The notes below the pieces were generated by a model. It was given only the letters and a program-made list of their open reading frames with translations, searched no databases and was not told the origin of the DNA. Position numbers and translations under genes: made by a program. 64,000 nt of DNA from positions 124,001 through 188,000 of the IMG/VR virus record IMGVR_UViG_3300030107_006644; one strand, 5' to 3'. Of the stretch, positions 33,267 through 57,983 are shown piece by piece (the stretch's first letter is position 1; each line of letters starts with the position of its first letter).

Positions 33267-33515
33267 TTGACTCAACACAACAAGTTTAATATTGGTGACC
33301 TCGTAAAGCTAGTACCGGCGGCAATAGGGTATCCAATGTTTGATGATGCAAAGGAAGCACTTGGTGTTGGCATTGTTATAGAACAGAGGATGCAGGCTCC
33401 AGAATGGGGAGATCCGTCCGGTATTCCCACCTTAATGTATCGTGTGATGTGGAGTGGTACAAATACGAAAAGATGGGAATTCCCCAGTGATTTAGTTAAA
33501 GTCATAGATAAATAG
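33267..33515 (+). CDS. GDLV-family SH3/KOW-like microprotein
   Basis: FNIGDLVKL...GVGIVIE...YRVMW...DLVKV. Confidence 0.65.
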   Translation: MTQHNKFNIGDLVKLVPAAIGYPMFDDAKEALGVGIVIEQRMQAPEWGDPSGIPTLMYRVMWSGTNTKRWEFPSDLVKVIDK

Positions 33516-33518
33516 TAT

Positions 33519-33806
33519 GTGGAGTGCGAACTTACAACTGCTACTGTCGGCATCGGAGATTTGATTAGGTGGGTAAAGCCGCTCTACTATATACAGAATG
33601 GTAAAGAGTATACATTAGAAAACTGGAACTATGCGCTCGTTATTGAGGTTAATATCAAGGTCTACTCTACTTTGGTAGTGCGAAATTTAACCTTGCAACT
33701 GCTTGGCGAACATAGCTCAATGCGTATAGACATATCTCTTGACATGTTGACTGATCTTGGGAAGATAGAGAAATTATGCGAAAGAAAATGGATTTGTATA
33801 GGTTGA
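33519..33806 (+). CDS. GDLV-family microprotein
   Basis: VGIGDLIRW...YALVIEV. Confidence 0.55.
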   Translation: MECELTTATVGIGDLIRWVKPLYYIQNGKEYTLENWNYALVIEVNIKVYSTLVVRNLTLQLLGEHSSMRIDISLDMLTDLGKIEKLCERKWICIG

Positions 33807-33887
33807 GTAGAACTACTTAAATTAAAGGTTCTCTCGAACCGCCGCGCGAAACTTCGCGGAAAATTTTTCAATGCGAGGTGCCAATGA

Positions 33888-34178
33888 GTGTCAATCAGGA
33901 GATTCCGAATCGGAGATTACATACGCTGGGAGTCTGGAATCGAGGCATTCAGCGCAAGTGCGTCGGGCATTGTCCACCCAATCGAGTTCAGATACGACTA
34001 TGGCATCGTGGTAGACATAGCAGAAGGCAATCCGAAGGAGAACGCATCGGACGTTATCATCGCGTATTGTGTCGAAAAGAGAGATTGGATTGTTGCTCAC
34101 GTTGACGATGCAGAATATCGCATGGAACTGGTCAGCCGAGCACCAGAAAAGCCCATTGGTAAAGTCGATGGGAGATGA
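33888..34178 (+). CDS. GDLV-family microprotein
   Basis: FRIGDYIRW...YGIVVDI...MELVSRA. Confidence 0.65.
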   Translation: MSIRRFRIGDYIRWESGIEAFSASASGIVHPIEFRYDYGIVVDIAEGNPKENASDVIIAYCVEKRDWIVAHVDDAEYRMELVSRAPEKPIGKVDGR

Positions 34179-34566
34179 CAAGACGATAGAAGAGAAGCCG
34201 CCTGATGTGTTCGTAGGCGACATGATAAAGTGGAAGGAAGCCGAGTTCTCATATACGCCAAGCGACTACAAGGTTAAACACTACGTCGGAATAGTCGTAG
34301 AGGTGAAGGTGCCGGAAGCTACAGTGCAGGATATAATGTGGAACATATACTATAGTCACAGCTACGACCCATTGGTAGACGAGTATTACCGCAAGAACTT
34401 CTGGGACCAAAGATATGAAGAGGTGCCATGGATTAAGGTGTTGACTATTCAAGGCAAGACCGGAAAGAAGGTGTTTCGCTACCTTTCGATGGAGGATGAG
34501 TTTGAAGTCCTATCGCGAGCTAGTCTGCTGATCCTGCCAACCACGGAGAAGGAGCATGAAGAGTAA
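34168..34566 (+). CDS. GDLV-family protein
   Basis: FVGDMIKW...VGIVVEV...FEVLSRA. Confidence 0.6.
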   Translation: MGDDKTIEEKPPDVFVGDMIKWKEAEFSYTPSDYKVKHYVGIVVEVKVPEATVQDIMWNIYYSHSYDPLVDEYYRKNFWDQRYEEVPWIKVLTIQGKTGKKVFRYLSMEDEFEVLSRASLLILPTTEKEHEE

Positions 34567-34786
34567 CCCCGATGCTTATGACATTGGCGATTACGTCGAA
34601 ATAATGGTGTGTCCGTCCATTGGTGGCGGTGTGGAAGTCTGCTACGGGATTGTAGTGGCTAGCTCATCAAAAAAAACGAGCTATTTAATATACTTGTTTG
34701 ACAAAAATCGCTGGAAGTGGTACAATGATTTTGAGCTTACACTGATGAGCGCAGCGGAAGAGGCAAATGGAACTAGGAAAAAATAG
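34556..34786 (+). CDS. GDLV-family microprotein
   Basis: YDIGDYVEI...YGIVV...LTLMSAA. Confidence 0.6.
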   Translation: MKSNPDAYDIGDYVEIMVCPSIGGGVEVCYGIVVASSSKKTSYLIYLFDKNRWKWYNDFELTLMSAAEEANGTRKK

Positions 34787-35090
34787 CGGCGAAAGGCTAC
34801 AAGTTTACAAATACACGGCAGAAGATGAGAACGGACAGATAGTGTTTTACTACACATACCCCGAGAAAAGCGAGAGAATCGTCAAGAGGGTTGAAGACAA
34901 GATTAAACAAGATGTGATCGTGTTCGATATATTTCCGGGCTTAATCAATGGTGACGAAGAACTAGAAGAGGCAATATGGGTGACAACGCAAATACAAACT
35001 CCCATGTATCTTCCGGCAGGCATGGGCGTAACTATGCATGACTTTGGAACCATACTATACGGAATCGCAGAAGATGACGAAGACTCTTGA
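34767..35090 (+). CDS. Hypothetical protein
   Basis: Preceded by TTGACA(34698)-17 bp-TACAAT(34721). Confidence 0.55.
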   Translation: MELGKNSGERLQVYKYTAEDENGQIVFYYTYPEKSERIVKRVEDKIKQDVIVFDIFPGLINGDEELEEAIWVTTQIQTPMYLPAGMGVTMHDFGTILYGIAEDDEDS

Positions 35091-35141
35091 CATGTTGCTG
35101 ACAACTTTTCCATTGACAGGCGGGTCGTGATGAGCTATATT
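35087..35141 (+). promoter_or_regulatory. Triple-TTGAC early promoter, copy 1
   Basis: TTGACA(35087), CTGACA(35098), TTGACA(35113)-17 bp-TATATT(35136). Confidence 0.85.
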
Positions 35142-35164
35142 ATTAGGGTAAACAGGAGGAAGCC

Positions 35165-35440
35165 TTGAAGGTTGGAGATTTGGTAACGCTTTCATCTTAT
35201 GGTAAGCGCATTAACTATATGGGTAAGTGCATAGCCCAGCGAAAATATAACGGAGGATTTCGTGGCCCGTTGATTGGGCTGGTTATCGCAAAAGTCGAGC
35301 CCACACATTCGTGGGAGAAGCAAATGAAGTATTCGGTTGCATGGATTGATAACTGCGAGTTCAATCCACAAGGTCGAGATAACTGGGTGAAGTATTTTCA
35401 CCGCAAAGACCTTAAGATGGTCAAAAAAGCAAAGAAGTAA
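35165..35440 (+). CDS. GDLV-family microprotein
   Basis: MKVGDLVTL...IGLVI...YSVAW...DLKMV. Confidence 0.7.
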   Translation: MKVGDLVTLSSYGKRINYMGKCIAQRKYNGGFRGPLIGLVIAKVEPTHSWEKQMKYSVAWIDNCEFNPQGRDNWVKYFHRKDLKMVKKAKK

Positions 35441-35450
35441 GGAGATAAAC

Positions 35451-35774
35451 ATGCATAGAACAATGATTATGACAATCGCAACGCTGATGGCAGCAGCAGC
35501 ATACGCAGATGAACCCCCAACAGCGGTCGAAGTGCCAGCTACCGCAACGACACAGCCAGTGCGCGTAGTTACAGGTACGGTTGTCGATTCAATGGGCGGA
35601 TCTGACCTCCACGGGGGATGGGTCAAGGTTCATTTGGATGGTCAGCCCGAAGGACTAATCAACACCTTCAGCGATATTGTCTTTCCGCACACCTGTACCA
35701 CACTCGGTGATAAGTTCTACATCGTCTTTGGTAGCGTTACAACCAGTATTACATGCGGGGAACCAACCAAGTGA
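35451..35774 (+). CDS. Secreted hypothetical protein
   Basis: Signal peptide ending AAYA; AAGGAG SD. Confidence 0.6.
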   Translation: MHRTMIMTIATLMAAAAYADEPPTAVEVPATATTQPVRVVTGTVVDSMGGSDLHGGWVKVHLDGQPEGLINTFSDIVFPHTCTTLGDKFYIVFGSVTTSITCGEPTK

Positions 35775-36073: not shown

Positions 36074-36124
36074 CATTTACTTGACAAAGTTTTCCTTGAC
36101 TTTGCGCTCACTGTAGAGTATATT
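36070..36124 (+). promoter_or_regulatory. Triple-TTGAC early promoter, copy 2 (probably leaderless transcript)
   Basis: TTGACA(36070), TTGACA(36081), TTGACT(36096)-17 bp-TATATT(36119); ATG at 36131. Confidence 0.85.
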
Positions 36125-36130
36125 ATTTGT

Positions 36131-36388
36131 ATGAAACGGAAGTTGAACATTGGCGATTTGGTGCGAGTCACCGAGGACACACACGATTCAAGGATGCCTC
36201 CCTCACGCACTGGTCTGATTGTGAGTCAGGTTTGCGAAGAGGCATGGAATGATGAAAAGGTGCCTGTCGGCGTGTTTAACGTATGGATGACGAACGGTGA
36301 AACTCTAAGGTTTCACGAAATGTTCTTGGTAAAGGTCGAAAGGGTCGAAAGGGTCGAAAGGAACGAAGATGAGAAGAGAGAAGATTAA
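36131..36388 (+). CDS. GDLV-family microprotein
   Basis: LNIGDLVRV...TGLIV...FNVW; 9-bp tandem repeat near the 3' end. Confidence 0.7.
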   Translation: MKRKLNIGDLVRVTEDTHDSRMPPSRTGLIVSQVCEEAWNDEKVPVGVFNVWMTNGETLRFHEMFLVKVERVERVERNEDEKRED

Positions 36389-36465: not shown

Positions 36466-36615
36466 ATGGAAATCGGTACTATTGTTCAACACTTTGTGTG
36501 TGATTATCGAGGTCGAATCGTGGCCATGGCCAATGGTCTGGTTCACGTCCTTGTCGATGGCGTTGGCGTTGTGGAAGATCGTGTTGAGAACTTTGTCTTG
36601 TCCGAAGCGGCTTGA
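36466..36615 (+). CDS. GDLV-like microprotein (49 aa, not in ORF track)
   Basis: MEIGTIVQHFVCDYRGRIVAMANGLVHVLVDGVGVVEDRVENFVLSEAA; GGAGA SD. Confidence 0.55.
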   Translation: MEIGTIVQHFVCDYRGRIVAMANGLVHVLVDGVGVVEDRVENFVLSEAA

Positions 36616-37296: not shown

Positions 37297-37434
37297 ATGG
37301 CTAAGAAGAAAATCAAAACCATCAAACCTCGCAACTGGCTGGCGCTTCATGCCCGTCGTCGTCGCGGTGGTCCGATGAGGGATCGAAAGAAGGCAGCGAA
37401 CAAGAAGGCATGCCGTGGGAGAGTCCATGCATAA
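37297..37434 (+). CDS. Highly basic 45-aa microprotein (not in ORF track)
   Basis: MAKKKIKTIKPRNWLALHARRRRGGPMRDRKKAANKKACRGRVHA; GGAGA SD. Confidence 0.6.
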   Translation: MAKKKIKTIKPRNWLALHARRRRGGPMRDRKKAANKKACRGRVHA

Positions 37435-37747
37435 GAAGCTGATCGGAGCACTCGTTCGGTTCTTGCCTGTTGGCAACTATCATGAGTTTCACAATGCTGT
37501 GGGTATGGTGACTTCGCATAATAAACCTTCACATGTTCGCGTCAAGTGGATCAAGCCTGTTCACTATGCCGTTCACAGCGAACACTACAAGTTTCATGGA
37601 CCGGCGACGGTTTCGGACTTTGACCTCGACCGGCTTGAAGTGATCAGTAGCGTACTTAGTGACGAGCAGCTTGAAAGCGTTGTCGGTGGTATGAGTCCAG
37701 AAAGTTTTAGTAACTGGCGAGCGGAGAAGTTAAATGAAAGTCGGTGA
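37427..37747 (+). CDS. GDLV-like protein with a C-terminal double-glycine-leader-like extension
   Basis: LIGALVRF...VGMV...VRVKW...LEVISS followed by LSDEQLESVVGG. Confidence 0.65.
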   Translation: MHKKLIGALVRFLPVGNYHEFHNAVGMVTSHNKPSHVRVKWIKPVHYAVHSEHYKFHGPATVSDFDLDRLEVISSVLSDEQLESVVGGMSPESFSNWRAEKLNESR

Positions 37748-37904
37748 TTTGGTTTGGATTGATTGGAATAGTTACCCAGAAGAGGCGTTCACTGCATCCG
37801 GCGTTATCATTAAGGATGAGGGATTTAGCTTCTTTAGGGTCTTGTTTAACGGTGAGCAGAGGGTTTTCCATTCTGATTATCTGGAGGCACTCAATGAAGC
37901 ATAG
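37734..37904 (+). CDS. GDLV-family microprotein (56 aa, not in ORF track)
   Basis: MKVGDLVWIDWNSYPEEAFTASGVIIKDEGFSFFRVLFNGEQRVFHSDYLEALNEA. Confidence 0.7.
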   Translation: MKVGDLVWIDWNSYPEEAFTASGVIIKDEGFSFFRVLFNGEQRVFHSDYLEALNEA

Positions 37905-38082
37905 TGGTGCGCCGAGTGTGGGCGATCTCGTTGTGGCGCTCTATGACGAGCAGCGAGGACTCAAGTGTATCGGCCTTGTTTTAGATTGCCGAGGTATTGA
38001 GTGTCGAATCAAGTGGGCTTCGCGCAGCGACCCTATTGGGTGGTGGAGAAGAGATCAGTTAAGGGTTGTGCATGCCGCTTGA
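37894..38082 (+). CDS. GDLV-family microprotein
   Basis: PSVGDLVV...IGLVLD...RIKW...QLRVV. Confidence 0.65.
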   Translation: MKHSGAPSVGDLVVALYDEQRGLKCIGLVLDCRGIECRIKWASRSDPIGWWRRDQLRVVHAA

Positions 38083-38135: not shown

Positions 38136-38339
38136 ATGAAAGTCGGTGATCTCGTTATTATGCCTGATCAGAAGCTGCTGAAGGATGAGCCTGTACCTAT
38201 TGCCGTCGTGCTGCAAACAAAGCATGATGGCATCAACCGAGGCACAAGCCATAAGCGTGTTAGGGTTCACTGGATTCAAGATAATGAAAGATCATGGGAG
38301 CCTGTGAAGTGGCTGGAGGTAATCAGTGCGGTTAGTTAG
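38136..38339 (+). CDS. GDLV-family microprotein
   Basis: MKVGDLVI...VRVHW...WLEVISAVS. Confidence 0.7.
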   Translation: MKVGDLVIMPDQKLLKDEPVPIAVVLQTKHDGINRGTSHKRVRVHWIQDNERSWEPVKWLEVISAVS

Positions 38340-38658
38340 AGACATAAAGTTAGTTAGAGATTTAATCCCTCGCATCATCGAGGAGGAAGGAGGCACATGC
38401 AACAGTCGCACGGTTCACGGGGTCGATGAACACCTTGTCTTTCTTAGAGTCAAGATGATCGAAGAGGTGAATGAGTTTATTGTGGATCCATCTTATGAAG
38501 AGGCTGCAGACATGTTAGAGGTTCTAAAAGCCTTTTGTTTATTAAATGGCTTGGATTTTGATACCGTGGTCAGCACGGCGCAAAGCAAACAAGAGGAGCG
38601 CGGAGGATTTCATCGCGGAGTCATCTTGCAGGAGGTAACAAACAGTGAAGATCGGTGA
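38326..38658 (+). CDS. MazG/PRA-PH-like nucleoside triphosphate pyrophosphohydrolase
   Basis: KLVRDLIPRII, KMIEEVNEF, EEAADMLEV, K.EERGGF. Confidence 0.85.
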   Translation: MRLVRDIKLVRDLIPRIIEEEGGTCNSRTVHGVDEHLVFLRVKMIEEVNEFIVDPSYEEAADMLEVLKAFCLLNGLDFDTVVSTAQSKQEERGGFHRGVILQEVTNSEDR

Positions 38659-38851
38659 CTTGGTAAGATGGTGCGGAAAAATCTGCGTTGTTACGGAGGT
38701 TTATGAAAGCAAGATATGGCGCACCGACAAAATGGGAAAGATGGTGCGTTGGGGAGAGATTGAACCCGAGCCTTTCGCCCGAATCTTGCTTGGCGATGAG
38801 CTGCGTGGTGTGCCGCAAACGGACCTAGAGGTAGTCAGTGGGTGCAGCTAA
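38645..38851 (+). CDS. GDLV-family microprotein
   Basis: MKIGDLVRW...DLEVVS. Confidence 0.7.
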   Translation: MKIGDLVRWCGKICVVTEVYESKIWRTDKMGKMVRWGEIEPEPFARILLGDELRGVPQTDLEVVSGCS

Positions 38852-40424: not shown

Positions 40425-40449
40425 ATATGAGTAACCAAGGAGAGTACAC

Positions 40450-40794
40450 ATGGCCTATCTCACGAAAGACGATCTCGTAATCATTCGCACAAGCGACACC
40501 ACCATTCAGGCGCGTGTTGTAGACATGCAGTTTCGGCGCTTCAAGCGTTCATGGCAGGACAAGAAGACTGGTGAGTGGAAATACCGATGGAAGTCCGTGC
40601 CTTATGCGATTTGCGAGTGCTTCATCGGCGCTCCTGTCGGTACAGAGTTCTTGATTCCCGGCTATAAGCTGAAGAGTGAGGTCAAGAACGGAGAAAGTCT
40701 GCTTGTTCTCCGCGACAAGTATGCAGCCGAGTTCGATGGCGAGTGGGTAAGTAAGATGTTGGCCGAAAGCAAGGCCAAGCGAGCTAGTGCGTGA
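40450..40794 (+). CDS. Hypothetical protein
   Basis: AAGGAG SD directly after the promoter. Confidence 0.7.
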   Translation: MAYLTKDDLVIIRTSDTTIQARVVDMQFRRFKRSWQDKKTGEWKYRWKSVPYAICECFIGAPVGTEFLIPGYKLKSEVKNGESLLVLRDKYAAEFDGEWVSKMLAESKAKRASA

Positions 40795-40955
40795 AAGTCG
40801 GTGATCTGGTAAAGTATAGACGCAACGCGGTAGACGCTGGTGTGGGCATCGCTCTCATCGAGGGTGCCAATGCGCGGTGGACGATTCTGTGGTCAACCGG
40901 CGTGAGTGAGATCGTTAGAGAAGAAAACTTGAAGGTGATCAATGAAAGTCGGTGA
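40791..40955 (+). CDS. GDLV-family microprotein (54 aa, not in ORF track)
   Basis: MKVGDLVKYRRNAVDAGVGIALIEGANARWTILWSTGVSEIVREENLKVINESR. Confidence 0.75.
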   Translation: MKVGDLVKYRRNAVDAGVGIALIEGANARWTILWSTGVSEIVREENLKVINESR

Positions 40956-41121
40956 TATAGTAACTTGTAGCTACGGTATTGGCATGGTGGCAGCAAAGGC
41001 TTTGCAGCATGACGGCCCGCTATTCCGTATCATATTCAACGCTTTCCCAGAGCGCAAGATATGGGTTCGCCCGTGGGAACTGGAGGTAATCAGTGCAAGT
41101 CGGCGATCTGGTCAAGTTTGA
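40942..41121 (+). CDS. GDLV-family microprotein (59 aa, not in ORF track)
   Basis: MKVGDIVTCSYGIGMVAAKALQHDGPLFRIIFNAFPERKIWVRPWELEVISASRRSGQV; junction TGA is CGA here. Confidence 0.7.
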   Translation: MKVGDIVTCSYGIGMVAAKALQHDGPLFRIIFNAFPERKIWVRPWELEVISASRRSGQV

Positions 41122-41281
41122 AACTAACTCATGGGTGATGCAGCGGGACGACTATGCAAATCCCGGTGTGATCGTGGAAGACGTGTCTGGCGTGAGCACC
41201 CGACGCTACCGAGTCATGTGGGCCGATCAGAGAATCACGGTCGAACATGAAGGTTATCTTAAACCTTTGACATCTTCTTGA
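41093..41281 (+). CDS. GDLV-family microprotein
   Basis: MQVGDLVKF...PGVIV...YRVMW. Confidence 0.75.
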   Translation: MQVGDLVKFETNSWVMQRDDYANPGVIVEDVSGVSTRRYRVMWADQRITVEHEGYLKPLTSS

Positions 41282-41342: not shown

Positions 41343-41525
41343 ATGATTAAGGTTGGCGATTTGGTAAGGATAGCGGAGCCCTTCATGGGCTATCAGGGTC
41401 AAGTGGGTATCGTTACAAAGATCCCGCTGACCGAGCGTGGCATGTGGGCTATCCTGCTCACATCCGGCGAGCTTATCGCCACGAGGCTTATGTCACGTAT
41501 GGAGGTCGTCAATGAAAGTCGGTAA
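41343..41525 (+). CDS. GDLV/KOW-like microprotein
   Basis: IKVGDLVRIAEPFMGYQGQVGIV (KOW-like)...MEVVNESR. Confidence 0.75.
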   Translation: MIKVGDLVRIAEPFMGYQGQVGIVTKIPLTERGMWAILLTSGELIATRLMSRMEVVNESR

Positions 41526-41691
41526 TCTAGTAAGTGTGAAGCGCACTCATGGCCGAGAGCCTGTCATCGGTGTTATCATCGAGATCAAGGAAGACGAACA
41601 CAATCGAGTCGCACTTGTTGAGTCTATTAAAGGTAACTATCGGCTTTATGCTAACCCTCTCGACATCGAGGTGATAAGTGACTGTCGGTGA
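41512..41691 (+). CDS. GDLV-family microprotein
   Basis: MKVGNLVSV...IGVIIEI...DIEVISDCR. Confidence 0.75.
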   Translation: MKVGNLVSVKRTHGREPVIGVIIEIKEDEHNRVALVESIKGNYRLYANPLDIEVISDCR

Positions 41692-41896
41692 TCTCGTTAA
41701 AGTTACACGCGCATCCATCGGCGTGCCTGTTGGGACATTGGGTCTAATCATGTCCTCGCATGAAACCCGTGGAGACTATGATACTGCGTCGGGCGAGAAG
41801 ATTCACATACTGCAGCTTATTGGAGGTGATTTTGCATGGGGGCAGAACCGTCGTTATTTGGGGAGAGACTTGGAGGTAATCAATGCAAGTCGGTGA
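41678..41896 (+). CDS. GDLV-family microprotein
   Basis: MTVGDLVKV...LGLIM...DLEVINASR. Confidence 0.75.
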   Translation: MTVGDLVKVTRASIGVPVGTLGLIMSSHETRGDYDTASGEKIHILQLIGGDFAWGQNRRYLGRDLEVINASR

Positions 41897-42056
41897 TTTG
41901 GTGAGGAACCGTAACTCTGAGGGCGGCCTGCTGGGTATTATTGTGGGCTGGCAGGATCTCAGTTATGAGGGTTTGCAGCCTATTATACACTGGTTCGACG
42001 GGCGCACAAGTTGGATTATGGCGCATCGCGTGGAGGTCATCAATGCAAGTCGGTAG
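41883..42056 (+). CDS. GDLV-family microprotein (57 aa, not in ORF track)
   Basis: MQVGDLVRNRNSEGGLLGIIVGWQDLSYEGLQPIIHWFDGRTSWIMAHRVEVINASR. Confidence 0.75.
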   Translation: MQVGDLVRNRNSEGGLLGIIVGWQDLSYEGLQPIIHWFDGRTSWIMAHRVEVINASR

Positions 42057-42252
42057 TCTATACAGGTTTGACCGTATCAACGGTCACACAACAACCGTGA
42101 ATGGCCGGTTGGCGATTTATTTGGGCGAAGCCTTCATCCGTCGAGACGATGGCGTGACCATCGAGAACCACAGGGTTTTGATGGTTGGGAACACAAGCCC
42201 GACGATCATTGATCGCGGCCTGCTGAAGCACATGCGAGAGGTGACAGCATGA
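42043..42252 (+). CDS. GDLV-like microprotein
   Basis: MQVGSLYRF...LAIYLG...HRVL...MREVTA. Confidence 0.7.
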   Translation: MQVGSLYRFDRINGHTTTVNGRLAIYLGEAFIRRDDGVTIENHRVLMVGNTSPTIIDRGLLKHMREVTA

Positions 42253-42422
42253 AAGTCGGTGATCTGGTAACACAGTCGCATGCCGGGAGTAATACAGGCA
42301 TCATCATAGCCATCGATCCCGAAGAAATCGGAGATTCAAAAGAAGTGCTGGTATTCTGGGACGATGGCGAAGTTTGGAACCATTCGATGCGGTTTCTGGA
42401 GGTGATCAGTGCAAGATCCTAG
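42249..42422 (+). CDS. GDLV-family microprotein (57 aa, not in ORF track)
   Basis: MKVGDLVTQSHAGSNTGIIIAIDPEEIGDSKEVLVFWDDGEVWNHSMRFLEVISARS. Confidence 0.75.
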   Translation: MKVGDLVTQSHAGSNTGIIIAIDPEEIGDSKEVLVFWDDGEVWNHSMRFLEVISARS

Positions 42423-42609
42423 ACCTTGGAAGGTGGGCGATCTAGTCAGGATTAAACGCACTGGTGAGACTGCGTTGATATTGTACGTTGCCGATGCGTC
42501 CATCGGCTGCAAAATGATTAAGATTCATACGGGCGAGTATTTCGCCCCTTGGAAGTTAAACCTTGTTAGCAAGGGAGCTAACAAGGTCGAAGAAGGGAGA
42601 GAGGAATGA
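42409..42609 (+). CDS. GDLV-family microprotein
   Basis: WKVGDLVRIKRTGETALIL...KLNLVSK. Confidence 0.7.
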   Translation: MQDPRPWKVGDLVRIKRTGETALILYVADASIGCKMIKIHTGEYFAPWKLNLVSKGANKVEEGREE

Positions 42610-42959: not shown

Positions 42960-43279
42960 AGTTAAACCTTGAAGCTGCACCCGTCGAGGTTGTCTGGCCG
43001 CCGTGTCTCTCGACTATCGGAGGCAAGCGATATGCGATCAGCGGCAACGTCTGGATCGAAGTACCGATGTCCACCGTGTTCGACGATTTGCCTCGATATA
43101 TGGTCTGTGAGGCCCGCAAAGCCCCTGTGACGGCTCCGTGTCAGTCATGGGAGGTACAGGGTAGCAAAGGCAACAAGTACGCTGTGAGGCTGTCTGAGGG
43201 TGTCTGGTCCTGCTCATGTCCCGGCTACTCGTTCCGTCGCAAATGTCGCCATATTGAGGAAAAGAAGATTGAAGTTTAA
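42956..43279 (+). CDS. SWIM zinc-finger protein
   Basis: VQGSKGNKYAV...WSCSCPGYSFRRKCRHI (CxC...CxH). Confidence 0.8.
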   Translation: MKLNLEAAPVEVVWPPCLSTIGGKRYAISGNVWIEVPMSTVFDDLPRYMVCEARKAPVTAPCQSWEVQGSKGNKYAVRLSEGVWSCSCPGYSFRRKCRHIEEKKIEV

Positions 43280-43454
43280 GGTTGGTGACTTGGTGACTTG
43301 GAGGAATGGCCTTGCTCAACCTCCCGGTATCATATTAAAGGTTTCCACCGAAAGGCGTGCGTACCTTATTTGCTTTCCGCATAAGAGCGTCACCCAGTGG
43401 TGTCCCGACGAGTTCTTGAACCAGTTGACAACCTCTTTACAAGAAAATCCTTGA
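43269..43454 (+). CDS. GDLV-family microprotein
   Basis: FKVGDLVTW...PGIILKV...YLICF; TTG start. Confidence 0.65.
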   Translation: MKFKVGDLVTWRNGLAQPPGIILKVSTERRAYLICFPHKSVTQWCPDEFLNQLTTSLQENP

Positions 43455-43771: not shown

Positions 43772-44575
43772 ATGCCCCGTGTGACCTACGCCGACCGCTT
43801 CGCTGCCCTTCTCGCCCGCCCGCTATCCAGTAGCGACCGGAGATTCTGCGAAAGTCTGCGAGACTTCTACCAGCGCAAAGGTCGCCTGACCTCTGGGCGT
43901 GTGCGGTGTTTTAAGCAGCTTGAGGAGCGTTACAGTGCCGAGAGGCTAGCCGAGGCTGCAGAGCGCGGCGGGCCGATGCTCAAGCGATTGAGCGGCCTTC
44001 TGCCCCGCGTGGAGGGCAACAAATGGGCAAGCGGATTCGTGATGAGTCTATCCCAACAAGTTCAAGGAGGGCGCAATCTCTCCGACAAGCAGATTACAAT
44101 GCTTGAAAAGATCGAGCGAGAAAACAGTGATGAAGCAATCGCAGCACGACAGACATGGCATCTTGATTATGATGACGACAAGCGTTTGCGTGCGATGGTC
44201 GCGGCTCGATACTACCGGGAGAGCGGAGGCTACTTCCGCGATCTGGTTAACAAGATTCTTGAAAACCCTGACTTCGTGCCGTCCCAGCGGCAGTACAGGT
44301 CTATCACCGAGAACAAGTATGCACAGAAGGTCTTGGATGCCCATTTCGCCGCGCCTAAGTACGCGGTCGGGTCATTCGTCGCGATGCGCTCCAGCGCACC
44401 GTGGGCATGCCGTAGCGGGGCCGGAAACAAGCCTTGCGTTGTCATCCAGACCGATGCCGCTCCTGTCGTCAGTGCAGCCCGAGGAGTCAAGCGTTACAAG
44501 GTGCTGCCCATCGGATCGGCAAGGCCGATCATTGTCGAGGAGCGACACATTAAAGCTGCGAGAGGACTTAAATAA
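43772..44575 (+). CDS. Hypothetical protein, paralogue of 19155..19772
   Basis: Shared C-terminal region; internal duplicated F..SL...Q..GR.L(T/S) helical unit. Confidence 0.75.
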   Translation: MPRVTYADRFAALLARPLSSSDRRFCESLRDFYQRKGRLTSGRVRCFKQLEERYSAERLAEAAERGGPMLKRLSGLLPRVEGNKWASGFVMSLSQQVQGGRNLSDKQITMLEKIERENSDEAIAARQTWHLDYDDDKRLRAMVAARYYRESGGYFRDLVNKILENPDFVPSQRQYRSITENKYAQKVLDAHFAAPKYAVGSFVAMRSSAPWACRSGAGNKPCVVIQTDAAPVVSAARGVKRYKVLPIGSARPIIVEERHIKAARGLK

Positions 44576-46168: not shown

Positions 46169-46729
46169 ATGACTGACACGCCGACCACTTCTGACCTTCG
46201 CGCCCTCAAGCTGACCGAGGACGAATGGCACTCACTCATGCACATGGGTGAGTTTGATCCTATTCGCGCTCACATGGATATGCTTGTGCTGGCTGGGCTT
46301 GCCGTGCGAACGCACATTCACCCGCCCGAATGGGATCTGACCGAGGCCGGTCACGCAGCCTGCAACGCGATTGATCTCATCCTCGACTGGGATGACTTTG
46401 TATTCGTAGGCGACGGAGAGGACACCGAGCCTTTCGGCGTTATTCAGCTTGAGAACGCTTCTGATGCCTCTGATACGGTCTTCCTGAATGGTGAGCCTAT
46501 CGAGCGCAGCGAAGCCGTAGAACTGGCTTCTGAGGCCCCTAAGCGCATCGGCGTAGGATCGCTTGTGCGCCACCAGCACCACGGCGAAGGTCTAGTGACC
46601 GATCATTTCATGTGGGATGGCGACTGGGGCGGCTTCAGGATTAAACTTCTTAAACCTTCCCAAACTGGCGCTACAACCTCGATTACCGAGTTTAGTGACC
46701 GCGCCGATTCCTTTGAACTTGTAAGTTAA
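46169..46729 (+). CDS. Hypothetical protein: wHTH-like N-terminus and SH3-like C-terminus
   Basis: LVLAGLA...WDLTEAG; IGVGSLVRHQHHGEGLV...FELVS. Confidence 0.6.
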   Translation: MTDTPTTSDLRALKLTEDEWHSLMHMGEFDPIRAHMDMLVLAGLAVRTHIHPPEWDLTEAGHAACNAIDLILDWDDFVFVGDGEDTEPFGVIQLENASDASDTVFLNGEPIERSEAVELASEAPKRIGVGSLVRHQHHGEGLVTDHFMWDGDWGGFRIKLLKPSQTGATTSITEFSDRADSFELVS

Positions 46730-52646: not shown

Positions 52647-52889
52647 ATGAACAAGGGCGATCTTGTATGGTGGTACGACTTGTATGATGATGATATCGTC
52701 AAAGACGCCGGTTCCGGAGTTGTCTTAGAGTCCAAGACATGGCGCTATGATAGTGAACCCGAGAGGGGCCCGAATTTCTCATCGAACATAATACGAACGA
52801 TTCATCGTGTGTATAAGTTTAAAACATGTAATGAAGACTGGTATACTGAATCAAATTTGGAACTTCTTTCAGAAAAAACAGAAGATTAG
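52647..52889 (+). CDS. GDLV-family microprotein
   Basis: MNKGDLVWW...GVVLE...HRVY...NLELLS. Confidence 0.6.
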   Translation: MNKGDLVWWYDLYDDDIVKDAGSGVVLESKTWRYDSEPERGPNFSSNIIRTIHRVYKFKTCNEDWYTESNLELLSEKTED

Positions 52890-53450: not shown

Positions 53451-56400
53451 ATGAGTAAATTAACAAGAAAACAGCTTGAAGAATTAATCCACAAGAAACT
53501 GATGGAAACTTCGATAGCTAGTACAAATCCCAGAAGCGCTCGTAGCGCTAGCATGCCGCCGAGAGCAAGGAATCAGGCAGATCAACGAAATCCTGCCGAT
53601 GAAGAAGTGCTTAGCGAAGAAGTTGGCGAGACAGAAGAGTTCGAAGCAGAAGAAACATCTGGTGGCGATGCAATTGCTATGGCAGATCCTCCCAGCGAAT
53701 CGGAGATTGAGGATTATAGGCCGGAATTACCGGCCGAGCGACCTCCAGCAGAACCAGATTTGGAGAGATTTAGAATATCCCGTGGTGGAGGCGGTGGAGG
53801 ATCTGGCGGGAGCCAGCAAGTCTTTTCGCGTAGAGCAGAGCTTACCCCGCAAGCGCGAGATTGGCAGCGTTATGATGCAGCAATCGAACGTCGAAACACA
53901 ATTTTAGATACCTTCGGTCAAGCTGAAAGTCCGGAAGCGGCTGCTGAACAGTTTCTTCGCGGATTGGAAATAAGTCAAGAGGATATTCAGGGCGCATTCG
54001 GAGGGCAAGATTTTAGATATCTCCGCACCGCGTTAGAAGATCAGACTGAAGACATCTGGGGAGGCATCAGTGATATGCGCACCGCGTTCGCTAGTCAGAT
54101 AAATCAAGAAAGTAGTCCGACAGATAGGCAAGGGCGATCTCAATATATTGCAAATCCGGATATGCAAGCACTGATGGCAAAAATAGAACAGGGCAGCCCT
54201 CTTGATTCTAATGATACCGAACTTATTACCAGCCGCATGCGGACTTTAGACGTCGGAGATACTCAAGCTTCGCCGATGGGAGCATGGGACTTCTACGAAC
54301 AAGAAGGCCTTACTGTGGCCGGAGAGGACGGCCGGATCGAAATGCGGTCGCAACAAGATATGACTCCTTTGCAAAGTGCAACAAAAAATGTCATCCTAAA
54401 CGCCATGGCTGGTGGAGATTTTCAGCCTACCATTGGAATTGAATCAGTGCCAATGGCCCAGTATGGCGGCGGGCCCGGGCTGGCGGTCACTAGAGCCGTT
54501 GTACCTCCGGGTTCTGAAGAGTATGAACACTTGCAGAGAGTGCACGATCAAGTTCGAAGACAGGGGATTCACCCCACAGAAAGACAGGTTGGTACAGATT
54601 CTGAAGGCCGGCCAATTCTTTTAGCTATGGCGGATCTTAACCCTGAACACTTCGCATCCACTCGCCAGTCGAATCAAAACGCGCATACGATTGCCGCTGA
54701 GCGTGCCGGCTGGGGTGCGGAAATGGAAGACCTCCGGCAATACGCGGACGAACTCAATGATCAGATTAGATCAACAAACCGTAGAGGTCAAGCAACAGAG
54801 CCGCTTCGACAAGGCACTTCTATTGCGGATACCGACTTTGTTCTCCCGATGGACTTTTGGCATCCAAATATGAACAGGCCGAGAACCCGCGAGGAACTCG
54901 AAGGAGTAATGACCTCGCGAATACAAAGACGAGCAACGCGGGATCGACGGCAGATCCGCAGACGAGCGAAGATCAGACGTGGGCAGGCTGCTGCAGCAGA
55001 TGAGGGCGGGTGGGCACAACAAGCTTATACGTCAATGGATCGGGCGAGGGCAGCCGCTGGGACTGAAAGCGGGGCACGCACTATGGCCTCTGTGGGTATT
55101 AAGCGCGATGATGATAAATTTAATGAATCCCTCGACTATTCCAATTTTAAACCTTGGACGTCGCAAGGATTTGCAAATCTTGTAATGGCTGAAAGAAACC
55201 ACCATAAGAATAAAATTGACAGACAAATTGCAGAAACTCAGGAACAAATTCGCACAAAACACAGAGATCGACGAGCATTAGAGAGCAAAGTGCGCAGAGT
55301 TTTAGAACAAAAACTAAAAAAAAAGCTGAATGAAGCAGTTCCATATGGACAGCAGTTTGTACCCGGTACACTACCCTACGACTATGGCGCGGGTGGAGAG
55401 GGCAATTGGGCCCAGCCGGCGAACTGGCAGCCGACAACTGTAGCCGATACTGGAGGTGGGGGTGCGCCGGCAGCCGTCACCCCACCGCCAAGGGGCAGGG
55501 CCTCGCACCCATTAAGCGATGTAATTGGCGATAACCAAGAACGCGGAAATCTATTTAGACGATGGGTGAATGCAAATTATGGAGATTCGCTAGCAGGAGT
55601 TTTTGAAACAGACCAGAGAACTGCGGGACTTACCAACCGTCGTACCGGGCAACCAGATCGCAGCCTAGGCGGGAGCGGAAACCCCTCTAACGCCCACATG
55701 CAAGCTGCTTGGGATGCCTATGGCGACCAATTTATTAGAGCCATGTCCGCTACCGACGAAGGCGCAGATGTACATCCTAATTTAAGACCGTCTGAGGGAG
55801 ACGCTGGATATTTTAGCCAATTCGAAATGCCTACGCTCACTCCTCCGTCTGAAATTGAAACGCCCGAAACCGTAACACACACTTTTGGACAAGCCGATCT
55901 TGAGCAGCATCAAGCTGCGCTAGATAGCGATGATCAATTACCTCCAAGCTGGAGTCAGCAAAACCAACAGACGAGTCATAGTCCCGCTTATAGGGACAGA
56001 ATGCTTAGATCCCGAGGCGGTCGGACATTTGGCCAAAAATTAGCAGACCCATGGCGTAGAGTTGGTCAACAAGTACGCGACACTGCAGGAACATATATAG
56101 ATCCAGAAGATACTACGAACGCCGGCGTAGCTAGAAACGTTGCGCGCGGTATTGGCGGGGCTGCAACTCTTGGCCTTGTTGGACATCACCAGAGTACGGA
56201 AGCTAGCCCGCTTGGAGTGGTGGGCTCAACGGCAAGAGCTATTGGTAGTAATATAGGTACCGCATTGACTGAGCCTGTTAGGGCTATTGGCAATATCGGC
56301 ACAAGACAGCGTATATCTGGATTTGACGCCGAGACTGGCCGGCGAACAGACACACCAGCTGGAACTCGCACAGATGTTGGCGCTGAGCTTAGTCGTATCG

Positions 56401-56651
56401 GTACTCACTTGAATCCTTTTGACGCCCAATCAGAACGTAGTCGCGCAACAGATCGTGCTGAAGCGAGCGCGGAAAGAATGGAAAGAATTGGGGGCCAAGA
56501 AGGTATAGATAGTATAACAGATATGATCAGTCAGCGCCGAGCAGAGCGTGGTGTGCAAGAAGGCAAAACTAAAAGTAGAATAGAAACGAAAGGTCTTTTG
56601 ACAGAAGAACAACGCCACAGGTTTATAAAACTAGCATTAATTAAAAGTTGA
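53451..56651 (+). CDS. Large probable virion-associated/internal protein
   Basis: 1066 aa; MSKLTRKQLEELIHKKLME start, KLNE linker, LLTEEQRHRFIKLA end; two CTATTTA upstream. Confidence 0.7.
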   Translation: MSKLTRKQLEELIHKKLMETSIASTNPRSARSASMPPRARNQADQRNPADEEVLSEEVGETEEFEAEETSGGDAIAMADPPSESEIEDYRPELPAERPPAEPDLERFRISRGGGGGGSGGSQQVFSRRAELTPQARDWQRYDAAIERRNTILDTFGQAESPEAAAEQFLRGLEISQEDIQGAFGGQDFRYLRTALEDQTEDIWGGISDMRTAFASQINQESSPTDRQGRSQYIANPDMQALMAKIEQGSPLDSNDTELITSRMRTLDVGDTQASPMGAWDFYEQEGLTVAGEDGRIEMRSQQDMTPLQSATKNVILNAMAGGDFQPTIGIESVPMAQYGGGPGLAVTRAVVPPGSEEYEHLQRVHDQVRRQGIHPTERQVGTDSEGRPILLAMADLNPEHFASTRQSNQNAHTIAAERAGWGAEMEDLRQYADELNDQIRSTNRRGQATEPLRQGTSIADTDFVLPMDFWHPNMNRPRTREELEGVMTSRIQRRATRDRRQIRRRAKIRRGQAAAADEGGWAQQAYTSMDRARAAAGTESGARTMASVGIKRDDDKFNESLDYSNFKPWTSQGFANLVMAERNHHKNKIDRQIAETQEQIRTKHRDRRALESKVRRVLEQKLKKKLNEAVPYGQQFVPGTLPYDYGAGGEGNWAQPANWQPTTVADTGGGGAPAAVTPPPRGRASHPLSDVIGDNQERGNLFRRWVNANYGDSLAGVFETDQRTAGLTNRRTGQPDRSLGGSGNPSNAHMQAAWDAYGDQFIRAMSATDEGADVHPNLRPSEGDAGYFSQFEMPTLTPPSEIETPETVTHTFGQADLEQHQAALDSDDQLPPSWSQQNQQTSHSPAYRDRMLRSRGGRTFGQKLADPWRRVGQQVRDTAGTYIDPEDTTNAGVARNVARGIGGAATLGLVGHHQSTEASPLGVVGSTARAIGSNIGTALTEPVRAIGNIGTRQRISGFDAETGRRTDTPAGTRTDVGAELSRIGTHLNPFDAQSERSRATDRAEASAERMERIGGQEGIDSITDMISQRRAERGVQEGKTKSRIETKGLLTEEQRHRFIKLALIKS

Positions 56652-56676
56652 CATTCTGTCATTAACGCTATATAAT
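56648..56676 (+). promoter_or_regulatory. Consensus sigma70 promoter (probably leaderless transcript)
   Basis: TTGACA(56648)-17 bp-TATAAT(56671); ATG at 56683 with no SD. Confidence 0.75.
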
Positions 56677-56682
56677 ATGTAA

Positions 56683-57153
56683 ATGAGTATTTGGTTTACT
56701 GGTAGTGGTTATGAAATCAAGTTTGACGAAATGGTCAAACAAATTGAACGCCATTTAGGCAAAAACGGCAAACTCTTTATCGGTACTGATTCTTTCTTGA
56801 CCAAAAAAAGCTGTGTTTTCGCAACAGCGATATGTCTCCACGGAGCGGATGAGCAATCAGGAGGTATTTATTTTGTTCAAAAGGTTAAAACATCTAACCG
56901 ACCCTTTCGGCACCTTATGTTACGAATCTTGACTGAGGTTGAAAAGACAGTCGACACCGCGCTTAAAATATCCTCGCTATATCCTGAAGCCGATATAGAA
57001 CTGCATTTGGATATAAGCGCGTCGAACACCGGTGCTGCAACTGCTAGGTTTTCCGATGCTTTAGCTGGATATGCAAAAAGCACAGGCTTCTCATGCAAAC
57101 TCAAACCGTACTCATGGGCCGCAGCTTCTGTGGCCGATAAACATTCAAAATAA
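56683..57153 (+). CDS. YkuK/DUF458 RNase H-like protein
   Basis: LFIGTDS, FATAICLH, RILTEVEKT, ELHLDI, KPYSWAAASVADKH. Confidence 0.85.
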   Translation: MSIWFTGSGYEIKFDEMVKQIERHLGKNGKLFIGTDSFLTKKSCVFATAICLHGADEQSGGIYFVQKVKTSNRPFRHLMLRILTEVEKTVDTALKISSLYPEADIELHLDISASNTGAATARFSDALAGYAKSTGFSCKLKPYSWAAASVADKHSK

Positions 57154-57161
57154 GAGGAACT

Positions 57162-57605
57162 ATGAATTTAGATGAAAAGAGGAAATTGCTGTATGCTGGA
57201 TATTACGAAGCTATTAACTGGGCCGAAAATGCTGGTTATGAAGTAATCGAGGGTCCGGAAGAACTAGATGCATGCTGGTCCGATGTAAAACACATAACAG
57301 TGTATTCTAGTCAAGGTGTTGAAAACAGGCTTTATTCTCTCCTACATGAATGCGGACATGCCCTAATCAGGAGAAACTGGAGTAAGTTTGAGTCCGAATA
57401 CCCCGCTCATGCTACGGCTGAACTTGACCGACGCAAGATGAAAAGTGAAAAATATAAAGCTTCCCTGATCGAAGAAGAGGTTGAAGCATGGAAGCGAGGA
57501 CGGCGTTTAGCCAAGAGGCTTGGAATATATGTCGACGATGAAAAATTTAATAAATTGAAAGCGAAATGTCTTATGAGTTATTTCACTTGGGCCGTAGAGA
57601 CGTGA
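57162..57605 (+). CDS. ImmA/IrrE-like zinc metallopeptidase
   Basis: LYSLLHECGHALI (HExxH), EEEVEAWKRG. Confidence 0.7.
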   Translation: MNLDEKRKLLYAGYYEAINWAENAGYEVIEGPEELDACWSDVKHITVYSSQGVENRLYSLLHECGHALIRRNWSKFESEYPAHATAELDRRKMKSEKYKASLIEEEVEAWKRGRRLAKRLGIYVDDEKFNKLKAKCLMSYFTWAVET

Positions 57606-57731
57606 AAAGACACAAGCTTAAAGAAAGACTTTCTTCTGTAAGAGGAAAATTAGAGCTTTTACCTGTAGTTTTCTTGTTGTCTGCTGCTATTTATACTCAC
57701 GTAATATACTACGGATATCAGCGATCAAAAA

Positions 57732-57983
57732 ATGAAAAAAAACGAAAGTCTTGGACATAGCGCAACAAAGAAATTTGGAATTGGAGATCTTGTAACGTGG
57801 AAGGACCTATCTGGTCCTCAAAAATTGGGTATAATAAAAGAAATATACACAAAAATGCAAGGAGGGAGACCCGTGGCATATGCCCGGGTTTTTCTAGTTA
57901 AAGATGACAAAAAACAATCCCTTTTGCACGAAGAAGACATAATTATTATAAAGCTACGGTTGGTTTCCAAGCGATCTCGATGA
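57732..57983 (+). CDS. GDLV-family microprotein
   Basis: FGIGDLVTW...LGIIKEI...ARVF...LRLVSK. Confidence 0.65.
   Translation: MKKNESLGHSATKKFGIGDLVTWKDLSGPQKLGIIKEIYTKMQGGRPVAYARVFLVKDDKKQSLLHEEDIIIIKLRLVSKRSR

What the first reader, a model, noticed from the sequence alone, without database searches (positions are those of the whole stretch)
33267..57983. Expansion of about 25 divergent GDLV SH3/KOW-like microproteins
Seen: about 25 ORFs of 49-130 aa share the pattern (K/Q/I)(V/I)GD(L/Y)V...G(I/V/L)(I/V)...(Y/V)xVxW...(D/E)LE(V/L)(I/V)S, with hypervariable loops. Six are below the 60-aa cutoff of the supplied track (36466, 37734, 40791, 40942, 41883, 42249). Most sit behind early promoters. 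Inference: a small beta-barrel scaffold diversified into a repertoire of binders, possibly anti-defence or host-takeover effectors.
Basis: partly seen in the sequence, partly recalled or inferred. Interest (0 to 1): 0.7.

Follow-up and report, generated by a model that had tools for sequence, protein, structure and literature searches.

The report
Phage array of tiny beta-barrel genes
An uncultured ~205-kb marine phage carries about 25 very different copies of one tiny KOW/SH3-like beta-barrel protein, packed as interchangeable, overlapping gene cassettes behind host-type promoters. The family is widespread in related ocean phages, has no name in the family libraries searched, and its function is unknown.

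Summary
Profile searches find 23 solid members, 3 probable ones and 2 copies fused to larger proteins. All lie on the + strand inside window 33267-57983, and none lies elsewhere in the 205.5-kb genome.

AlphaFold2 gives a confident five-strand SH3-like barrel (pLDDT 93). Its closest solved neighbours are Spt5/NusG KOW domains and PsaE.

One of the six sub-60-aa ORFs (36466) is not supported, and neither are 38842 or 40450.

New findings:
LEV-I-N-E-S-R-stop is co-encoded with the next gene's Shine-Dalgarno site, start codon and M-K-V-G-D, in a conserved 14-nt overlap.
- The family is clade-wide. There are about 2,100 domains in 2.3 Mb of related marine viral contigs, 894 clusters at 50% identity, and 10-20 copies in each of five complete relatives.
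- Orthologues are under purifying selection (dN/dS 0.05-0.37). Loops are not hypervariable within orthogroups.
- Cassettes are reshuffled between close relatives, with block ends exactly at the junctions.

Function is untested. The best guess is a set of host-directed single-domain binders expressed from host-RNAP promoters. No Pfam, PHROG or PADLOC family matches.

The parts
33267..33515 (+). family member, 82 aa (TTG start)
   Evidence: HMM E 1e-15; independent HMM 9e-9
33519..33806 (+). possible divergent member, 95 aa; only the N-terminal half matches
   Evidence: HMM E 0.2-0.75; hhalign prob 73 over 30 columns
33888..34178 (+). family member, 96 aa
   Evidence: HMM 7e-14; 0.014 with the independent HMM
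34168..34566 (+). family member, 132 aa, with a long insertion; start overlaps the previous stop by 11 nt
34556..34786 (+). family member, 76 aa; 11-nt overlap with the previous gene
35165..35440 (+). family member, 91 aa, basic (pI 10); first gene after the promoter at 35084-35151
36131..36388 (+). family member, 85 aa, with a (VER)n tail encoded by a 9-nt tandem repeat
37415..37747 (+). family member, 106-110 aa, with a C-terminal extension (ATG at 37427)
   Evidence: independent HMM E 0.0012; hhalign prob 97
37734..37904 (+). family member, 56 aa; 14-nt overlap junction
37894..38082 (+). family member, 62 aa; 11-nt overlap
   Evidence: independent HMM 1e-6; hhalign prob 98
38136..38339 (+). 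family member, 67 aa; its tail carries the SD and start of a non-family gene at 38326
38645..38851 (+). family member, 68 aa
39911..40108 (+). probable divergent member, 65 aa
   Evidence: hhalign prob 82 over 49 columns; HMM E 0.78
40791..40955 (+). family member, 54 aa
40942..41121 (+). family member, 59 aa; 14-nt overlap
41093..41281 (+). family member, 62 aa; 29-nt overlap
41343..41525 (+). family member, 60 aa; first of a translationally coupled run of seven (41343-42609)
41512..41691 (+). family member, 59 aa; 14-nt overlap
41678..41896 (+). family member, 72 aa; 14-nt overlap
41883..42056 (+). family member, 57 aa; 14-nt overlap
42043..42252 (+). probable divergent member, 69 aa; same junction, but only the N-terminal half aligns
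   Evidence: hhalign prob 96 over 33 columns; dN/dS 0.13 against its orthologue
42249..42422 (+). family member, 57 aa; the one modelled
   Evidence: AlphaFold2 pLDDT 93
42409..42609 (+). family member, 66 aa; 14-nt overlap
43269..43454 (+). family member, about 61 aa (start uncertain, TTG)
52647..52889 (+). outlying family member, 80 aa
57732..57983 (+). outlying family member, 83 aa, basic
43772..44575 (+). 267-aa conserved protein: helical N-terminal domain plus a C-terminal barrel of the same kind (residues ~200-262)
   Evidence: hhalign prob 91; AlphaFold2 pLDDT 92.6; fold matches for residues 192-267
46169..46729 (+). 186-aa conserved protein whose C-terminal ~60 residues resemble the family
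   Evidence: hhalign prob 96 over 35 columns
41870..41902 (+). example of the conserved junction: ..GGAGGTnATCA-ATG-mAA-GTn-GGT-GA, holding the SD, the next start and the previous stop in 14 overlapping nt. Other copies at 37722, 38314, 40779, 40930, 41081, 41500, 41666, 42031 and 42396
35084..35151 (+). conserved promoter module (TTGACA x3, N17, TATATTATA-GGGTAA). Other copies at 36066-36124, 36602-36666, 39265-39332, 40367-40434, 41263-41330, 43422-43489, 43719-43761, 45192-45259 and about 46731-46791
36466..36615 (+).
   Evidence: no HMM hit; hhalign prob 13 and no homologue in related loci

Best explanation
The region is the hyperplastic, host-RNA-polymerase-transcribed (probably early) part of an uncultured ~205-kb marine myophage. 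It holds a clade-wide multigene family of 54-132-aa single-domain KOW/SH3-like beta-barrel proteins.

The genes are built as plug-in cassettes. Short operons start at a conserved sigma70-type promoter. Inside an operon, each gene's last codons (L-E-V-I-N/S-x-S-R-stop) also encode the Shine-Dalgarno site (GGAGGT), the start codon and M-K-V-G-D of the next gene. The upstream TGA stop sits inside the GGT-GAY codons of the invariant Gly-Asp.

This 14-nt overlap couples translation. Because it is shared by all cassettes, it also gives a boundary at which recombination swaps whole genes without breaking either neighbour.

The paralogues are old, separately conserved lineages under purifying selection. 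Each has its own loops and charge.

Shown: family membership, fold, junction, promoters, selection, shuffling and wide distribution.

Inferred: each barrel is a small binder that docks on a different host (or phage) macromolecule during takeover or counter-defence.
For: - **Family and strand bias:**
- **Fold:** AlphaFold2 pLDDT 93. Structural neighbours are Spt5/NusG KOW, PsaE, PetP, HspQ and Tudor/PWWP.
- **Junction:** 14-nt overlap in the window. The same register occurs in 307 adjacent family pairs. 1,178 of 2,020 members in related loci have an upstream TGA inside GGT-GAY.
- **Dual coding:** the LEV-like motif falls from 74% to 59% to 26%, and SD-like sequence from 71% to 56% to 12%, as downstream coupling is lost.
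- **Promoters:** 25 sigma70-like sites on the + strand against 1 on the - strand of the genome. The triple-TTGACA form occurs only at 35.1-46.8 kb. In relatives the counts are 501 against 12 and 151 against 0.
- **Coding and selection:** dN/dS 0.05-0.37 against orthologues.
- **Diversity:** 2,063 members fall into 894 clusters at 50% identity, and every window member is in a different cluster. The best within-genome paralogue is at most ~38% identical over the full length, and it is adjacent in only 2 of 22 cases. pI ranges from 4.3 to 10.1. Loops are orthogroup-specific and conserved.
- **Shuffling:** gene order differs from a relative whose ATPase is 86% identical, and blastn blocks end at the junctions. 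Cassette dS is 0.02-0.47 against 1.1 for core genes.
- **Spread:** 1,345 representatives at E<=1e-3, at least 120 IMG/VR stretches carrying the junction, and 10-20 copies in each of 5 complete relatives.
Against: - No functional evidence of any kind was obtained. No Pfam, PHROG or PADLOC family matches, no RNA run was listed, and the host is unknown.
- Strong purifying selection and conserved loops do not look like an ongoing arms race.
- The MoxR ATPase-vWA pair, thought in other jumbo phages to help virion assembly (PMC7824862), sits behind the same promoter type. The promoters may therefore not be strictly early.
- The fold rests on one standalone member modelled with the family alignment, plus one fused domain.
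- The junction as a recombination site rests on one pairwise genome comparison plus dS heterogeneity.
Confidence: 0.55

Rival explanations
1. The barrels act like true KOW or bacterial Tudor-like domains. They bind nucleic acid, RNA polymerase or the ribosome and retune host transcription or translation, as NusG/Spt5 KOW, CarD/Mfd/UvrD Tudor-like domains or the KOW-like N-terminal domain of T4 MotB do.
For: - The best structural neighbours are Spt5/NusG/eS4 KOW domains, the UvrD C-terminal domain bound to the RNAP lobe, and the Mfd RNAP-interacting domain.
- The G-D-x-V ... G-I-V pattern resembles the KOW motif.
- One member scores E 1e-4 to KOW6_SPT5, and multi-domain relatives hit Pfam KOW.
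- T4 MotB is an early, non-essential KOW-like DNA/H-NS-binding protein (PMC7827196).
Against: - No member reaches a Pfam KOW threshold.
- Charge is not uniformly basic: the median pI of the family is 6.5, and 42% of members have pI<6.
- Twenty-five or more different copies would be excessive for one conserved target.
Confidence: 0.2
2. The barrels are adaptors, substrates or co-factors of the phage MoxR AAA+ ATPase / metallopeptidase-vWA pair or of host AAA+ proteases. This would resemble the SH3-like HspQ, which tunes Lon. They would then serve in assembly or targeted proteolysis.
For: - The arrays lie next to the ATPase-vWA pair in the window (46841-49224) and in most related loci.
- The protein just upstream of the ATPase ends in a family-like domain.
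- HspQ is the top Foldseek PDB hit.
- The same promoter type drives the ATPase.
Against: - Synteny may only reflect the layout of this genome region.
- The outlying members at 52.6 and 57.7 kb and the shuffled order argue against a fixed module.
- No interaction test was possible.
Confidence: 0.1
3. Translationally coupled neighbours are subunits of one hetero-oligomer, for example an Sm/Hfq-like ring of different barrels.
For: - Seven genes are coupled in a row at 41343-42609.
- Sm/Hfq proteins are also small SH3-like barrels (established knowledge).
Against: - Neighbours differ between close relatives. For example, 42249 and 42043 sit elsewhere in the relative.
- Copy number varies from 10 to 20 among complete relatives.
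- The one complex prediction gave no answer and counts neither way.
Confidence: 0.05
4. The ORFs are non-functional filler or selfish DNA spread by junction-mediated recombination, and the motif reflects only repeated DNA.
For: - The junction and promoter are repeated DNA.
- Comparable small-ORF regions can be lost in culture in a cyanophage (PMC4503421).
Against: - dN/dS is 0.05-0.37 outside the overlaps.
- The fold is confident.
- Paralogues share protein-level patterns at 17-42% identity with no DNA similarity outside the junction.
- All matches lie on one strand and in frame.
Confidence: 0.03

Closest known systems
KOW domains (NusG/Spt5, ribosomal uL24/eS4) and other SH3-like small beta-barrels (PsaE, PetP, NdhS, HspQ, Tudor/PWWP)
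   Same: - Five-strand barrel with a short 3-10 turn before the last strand.
- G-D-x-V in strand 1 and G-I/V-V in strand 2 recall the KOW motif.
- Like PsaE, PetP and NdhS, they are free-standing ~60-aa barrels, a size and form that usually docks on a larger complex.
   Different: - No member passes a Pfam threshold.
- No conserved basic patch or aromatic cage is evident.
- The genes are phage-encoded and present in 10-25 divergent copies per genome.
PeSL (promoter-early stem-loop) mobile regulatory cassettes in hyperplastic regions of T4-type phages (PMC2839356, PMC4122927)
   Same: - Small, mostly unknown early genes.
- A conserved promoter motif repeated many times.
- Insertions, replacements and reordering between close relatives, with boundaries at the repeated motif.
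   Different: - Here the main shared boundary is a coding overlap (stop/SD/start inside two ORFs), not an intergenic promoter-terminator.
- Only one of ten promoters carries a stem-loop.
- The cassettes all belong to one protein family.
Lineage-specific expansions in jumbo phages, e.g. ~35 zinc-ribbon copies in Bacillus phage G (PMC7824862)
   Same: One tiny domain is amplified to tens of copies in a large phage genome, with function guessed to be binding or regulation.
   Different: - A different fold.
- The expansion is shared by a whole clade with a very large pan-repertoire (894 clusters at 50% identity in 2.3 Mb), not private to one phage.
T4 MotB N-terminal KOW-like domain (PMC7827196)
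   Same: An early, non-essential-region phage protein with a KOW-like barrel that acts on host nucleoid proteins.
   Different: - MotB is a single-copy two-domain protein (KOW plus OB fold).
- No sequence relationship was detected here.
Host-takeover module of Bacillus phage SPO1 (from my own knowledge, not checked here)
   Same: A block of about two dozen small genes behind strong host-type promoters and strong ribosome-binding sites.
   Different: SPO1 takeover genes are unrelated to each other and are not overlapping cassettes of one fold.

Membership tests
Pfam KOW (PF00467) and SPT5 KOW families | Sequence score at or above the curated gathering threshold | tested here: not met
   0 of 21 members pass. 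The best are KOW6_SPT51-2 at E 1e-4 in one member and KOW4_SPT5 at 12 bits against a cut-off of 27.
Pfam KOW (PF00467) and SPT5 KOW families | SH3-like five-strand barrel with the Gly-rich strand1-strand2 hairpin | tested here: met
Pfam KOW (PF00467) and SPT5 KOW families | Binding to ribosome, RNA polymerase or nucleic acid | not testable with these tools
   The host is unknown, and no interaction data could be obtained.
SH3-like small beta-barrel fold (general) | Five antiparallel strands forming a closed barrel of ~55-65 residues | tested here: met
   The C-terminal domain of 43772-44575 has the same fold.
Tudor / PWWP readers | Conserved aromatic cage | tested here: inconclusive
   The alignment has only G4 invariant and D5 and V7 at >=90%. 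A Trp after strand 3 is frequent but not invariant. Side-chain geometry was not examined.
PeSL-type mobile regulatory cassettes | Repeated conserved early-promoter motif at gene-block boundaries | tested here: met
   Ten copies of a 43-68-nt promoter module. The promoter stretch 40371-40447 matches five places in the relative.
PeSL-type mobile regulatory cassettes | Stem-loop terminator joined to the promoter | tested here: not met
   Only the promoter at 39288-39316 holds a strong stem-loop. Terminator-like sites are not above the shuffled expectation (13 against 11.2).
PeSL-type mobile regulatory cassettes | Rearrangement breakpoints between close relatives coincide with the motif | tested here: met
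   blastn blocks against the relative end at the coding junctions (41512, 41907, 42042, 42270, 42239, 42415, 42396), and the blocks are in a different order. This rests on one relative only.
Known defence-system proteins (PADLOC) | Profile match | tested here: not met
   0 of 21 members match. No anti-defence library was available.
PHROGs phage protein families | Profile match | tested here: not met
   Only one of 10 members has a weak hit (phrog_9830, E 0.008, unknown function).

The most novel reading that the evidence does not exclude
The shared 14-nt stop/SD/start overlap is an evolved universal connector. It would turn the early region of a whole clade of ocean phages into an integrase-free cassette library. 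Any barrel gene could be inserted, deleted or reordered by homologous recombination at the connector and would at once be translated in the new operon. This would let phage populations mix a pan-repertoire of hundreds of host-targeting binders.
Probability: 0.3. Interest if true: 0.75.

Novelty: new variant of a known kind. Interest (0 to 1): 0.6.

Why it matters
Small early phage proteins are the main source of host-takeover and anti-defence factors, yet most are orphans. Here one simple, confidently folded scaffold accounts for 10-25 genes per genome across an abundant, uncultured clade of ~190-205-kb marine phages. It has at least 894 sequence clusters and no entry in Pfam or PHROGs. That gives a large natural library of stable ~60-residue binders to screen.

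It also gives a clear example of a protein 'motif' being partly a nucleotide-level device: translational coupling plus a recombination-safe boundary. This matters for annotation, because many members fall below 60 aa or are mis-started by ORF callers. It also matters for understanding how hyperplastic regions of large phages are rebuilt.

Tried and rejected
- **GenBank phages:** blastn of 8 kb of the region found no match. tblastn of two members also found none, even at E<=1. No cultured phage was found to carry a recognisable close relative.
- **Family libraries:** Pfam, PHROGs and PADLOC gave no family.
- **The search for related loci with the family alignment:** It was replaced by a DNA pattern for the junction.
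- **The search for homologous proteins:** gave only unnamed marine metagenome proteins.
- **Junction scan of cellular genomes:** only 7 MAG contigs from unrelated taxa, probably mis-binned phage DNA, so there is no host clue.
- **Sequencing runs:** marine DNA metagenomes hold the region, but no RNA run was listed. Transcription therefore could not be checked, and read laying was not used.
- **Complex prediction for the conserved neighbour pair 41512+41678:** the verdict was 'no answer', so it is not evidence either way.
- **Recent tandem duplication:** rejected. Paralogues are at most ~38% identical, and nearest paralogues are rarely neighbours.
- **Rejected as members:** 36466-36615, 38842-39090 and 40450-40794.
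- **Fold searches with the 267-aa fusion protein:** they gave no informative match for its helical N-terminal domain.
- **Rfam:** no match in the window.


Full report
**What the window is.** The window is bases 124,001-188,000 of a single 205,517-bp virus record. All 62 ORFs of 300 aa or more lie on the + strand. Recognisable genes include ribonucleotide reductase, a DnaE-type polymerase, a GroEL-like chaperonin, a MoxR-type ATPase with a vWA partner, a baseplate wedge protein and a large terminase. It is therefore a large tailed phage of the myovirus type. The nearest cultured relatives by terminase are Flavobacterium phage immuto (45%) and Microcystis phage Mel-JY01 (41%). The polymerase is at most about 30% identical to that of any GenBank phage. 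The DNA is held by marine metagenome runs.

**Checking the observation.** The short motif [VIL]GD[LYIMF][VI] occurs 23 times on the + strand of the window and never on the - strand. Genome-wide the counts are 24 and 1.
- An HMM from 17 seeds, iterated on all stop-to-stop ORFs of the genome, gives 21 members at E<=0.01. All are on the + strand and within 33249-57983.
- A second HMM built only from related contigs, and so independent of this genome, recovers 23.
- Profile-profile comparison adds 42043-42252 (prob 96, N-terminal half), 39911-40108 (prob 82) and 33519-33806 (prob 73). It rejects 36466-36615, 38842-39090 and 40450-40794. Four control genes score below 1.
- It also shows the domain at the C-terminus of two larger conserved proteins, 43772-44575 and 46169-46729.

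'About 25' is therefore right. Five of the six sub-60-aa ORFs are solid, and one (36466) is not supported.

**Fold.** AlphaFold2 on member 42249-42422, using the 21-sequence family alignment, gives a five-strand barrel with mean pLDDT 93.
- In AlphaFold DB and BFVD the neighbours are unnamed marine and phage proteins, together with small DUF families of the same fold.
- The 267-aa protein at 43772 models as a helical domain followed by the same barrel.
- No member reaches a Pfam threshold. No PHROG or PADLOC family matches, apart from one weak PHROG hit of unknown function.

**The junction.** Refining the start codons shows that most neighbours overlap by 14 nt. The sequence ..CTG-GAG-GTn-ATC-AAT-GAA-AGT-nGG-TGA reads L-E-V-I-N-E-S-R-stop in one frame. 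In the next frame it reads ATG-AAA-GTn-GGT-GA.., which is M-K-V-G-D. GGAGGT, inside the L-E-V codons, lies 5 nt before the next ATG and serves as its Shine-Dalgarno site.
- The same register is found in 307 adjacent family pairs in related loci.
- In 1,178 of 2,020 members from related loci, an upstream ORF ends with a TGA inside the GGT-GAY codons of Gly-Asp. In uncoupled members the Gly codon is free (GGT 51%, GGC 28%, GGA 16%).
- The C-terminal 'LEV' motif is present in 74% of members coupled to another member, in 59% of members overlapping some other ORF, and in only 26% of members with no close downstream ORF. SD-like sequence falls in parallel from 71% to 56% to 12%.

So the Glu of LEV and the N/S-x-S-R tail are largely nucleotide constraints. 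The alternating hydrophobic pattern of the last strand and the N-terminal G-D-x-V are protein constraints.

**Promoters.** A 43-68-nt module (TTGACA, 5 nt, TTGACA, 9 nt, TTGACT, 17 nt, TATATTATA-GGGTAA) occurs ten times between 35.1 and 46.8 kb and heads the operons.
- Genome-wide, sigma70-like sites number 25 on the + strand and 1 on the - strand.
- In 203 related loci the counts are 501 against 12, and for the triple-TTGACA form 151 against 0.
- This supports transcription by the host polymerase. 'Early' is inferred, and the MoxR ATPase gene sits behind the same module.

**Distribution.**
- The family profile finds 1,345 cluster representatives at E<=1e-3 among 1.84 billion proteins. Most are 52-90 aa with the same ends, and some are tandem fusions.
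- The junction pattern hits at least 120 IMG/VR stretches.
- With loci around the MoxR ATPase (63-86% identical, many contigs of 185-204 kb), 2.3 Mb of related DNA holds about 2,100 domains, always on one strand per locus.
- Five complete relatives have 10-20 matches each to the window-derived profile.
- Homologues come from Tara Oceans and other marine samples.

**Evolution.**
- The 2,063 single-domain members fall into 894 clusters at 50% identity, and every window member is in a different cluster.
- Within the genome the best paralogue is at most about 38% identical over the full length, and it is a neighbour in only 2 of 22 cases. The array is therefore a collection of old lineages and not a recent tandem duplication.
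- Against the closest relative (ATPase 86% identical), orthologous cassettes show dN/dS 0.05-0.37, which is clear purifying selection. Several cassettes have much lower dS (0.02-0.47) than the core ATPase and vWA genes (about 1.1), which points to recent exchange.
- Gene order differs between the two phages, and the blastn blocks end at the junctions.
- Within orthogroups, loop (insert-state) positions are 53% identical against 56.5% for core positions. Each orthogroup has its own conserved loop motifs.
- pI ranges from 4.3 to 10.1.

**Interpretation.** Shown: a real, translated-looking, clade-wide family of KOW/SH3-like barrels organised as overlapping cassettes behind host-type promoters, reshuffled between relatives. 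Inferred: each paralogue binds a different macromolecule during host takeover or counter-defence.

The rivals, none of which is excluded, are KOW-like action on RNAP, ribosome or DNA; adaptors for the neighbouring MoxR/vWA pair or for host AAA+ proteases; and hetero-oligomer subunits. The hetero-oligomer idea is weakened by variable neighbours and copy number. The single complex prediction gave no answer and is not used as evidence. Non-functional filler is disfavoured by dN/dS and the confident fold.

**Comparison with known systems.**
- The fold is that of KOW and SH3-like barrels, but sequence membership of Pfam KOW fails.
- The genome behaviour resembles PeSL-mediated modular shuffling in T4-type hyperplastic regions (PMC2839356, PMC4122927). 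Here, however, the shared boundary is a coding overlap and the cassettes are one family.
- Expansions of a tiny domain in a jumbo phage have a precedent in phage G zinc ribbons. The MoxR-vWA-peptidase pair has been described for T4-like jumbo phages (PMC7824862).
- T4 MotB is an early KOW-like protein acting on H-NS and DNA (PMC7827196).

I rate this a new variant of known kinds: an unnamed family and an unusual connector, but familiar principles.

**Limits.** There are no expression data, the host is unknown, only one standalone member and one fusion were modelled, and the breakpoint analysis rests on one relative.

Noticed in passing
window 35084-46791 (ten copies; e.g. 39265-39332): The promoter module has three TTGACA-like hexamers (starts 11 nt and 15 nt apart) before N17-TATATTATA-GGGTAA. 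It is conserved across the clade: 151 copies on the gene strand and 0 on the other strand in 2.3 Mb. The two extra hexamers could be a regulator site or tandem -35 elements.
   Followed up: partly
window 46841-49224: A MoxR-type AAA+ ATPase (355 aa) and a vWA protein of the metallopeptidase-vWA kind (409 aa) lie just downstream of the arrays. They sit behind the same promoter type (-35 at 46763). The same pair lies next to the arrays in most related loci.
   Followed up: partly
L213 7888-8224 and 9763-11744 (genome about 195.9-199.7 kb, outside the window): The phage carries a tmRNA gene (tag peptide ending in LAA) and four tRNAs (Arg-TCT, Leu-TAA, Lys-TTT, Gly-GCC).
   Followed up: no
window 39288-39316: A 12-bp GC-rich stem-loop spans the -35 hexamer and spacer of one promoter copy. 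The other copies lack it.
   Followed up: no
window 36334-36361: A perfect 9-nt tandem repeat (3.1 copies) encodes the (V-E-R)n tail of member 36131-36388.
   Followed up: no
window 42239-42415 vs L126 2884-3060: One cassette is 97.7% identical in DNA to a relative whose core genes have dS of about 1.1. In the relative it sits in a different operon, which suggests recent lateral exchange of a single gene.
   Followed up: partly
window 12785-12794: A run of 10 N (genome 136785-136794): an assembly gap or masked stretch.
   Followed up: no
window 21670-26910, 53451-56651, 58056-63872; genome 27552-39830 and 15087-23465: Very large ORFs (1,746, 1,066, 1,938, 4,092 and 2,792 aa). Several have low-complexity Gly/Ala/Gln-rich stretches. 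Their function was not examined.
   Followed up: no
window 42890-43279 and 45295-46077: Small zinc-binding proteins lie among the cassettes: a SWIM zinc finger (E 6e-4) and a protein with CCHC zinc knuckles.
   Followed up: no
window 50015-50973: About 1 kb has no convincing + strand ORF and lies in a relatively AT-rich part of the window (GC 0.44 for 50001-52000), just before the 544-aa HTH/excisionase-like gene. Rfam finds nothing there.
   Followed up: partly
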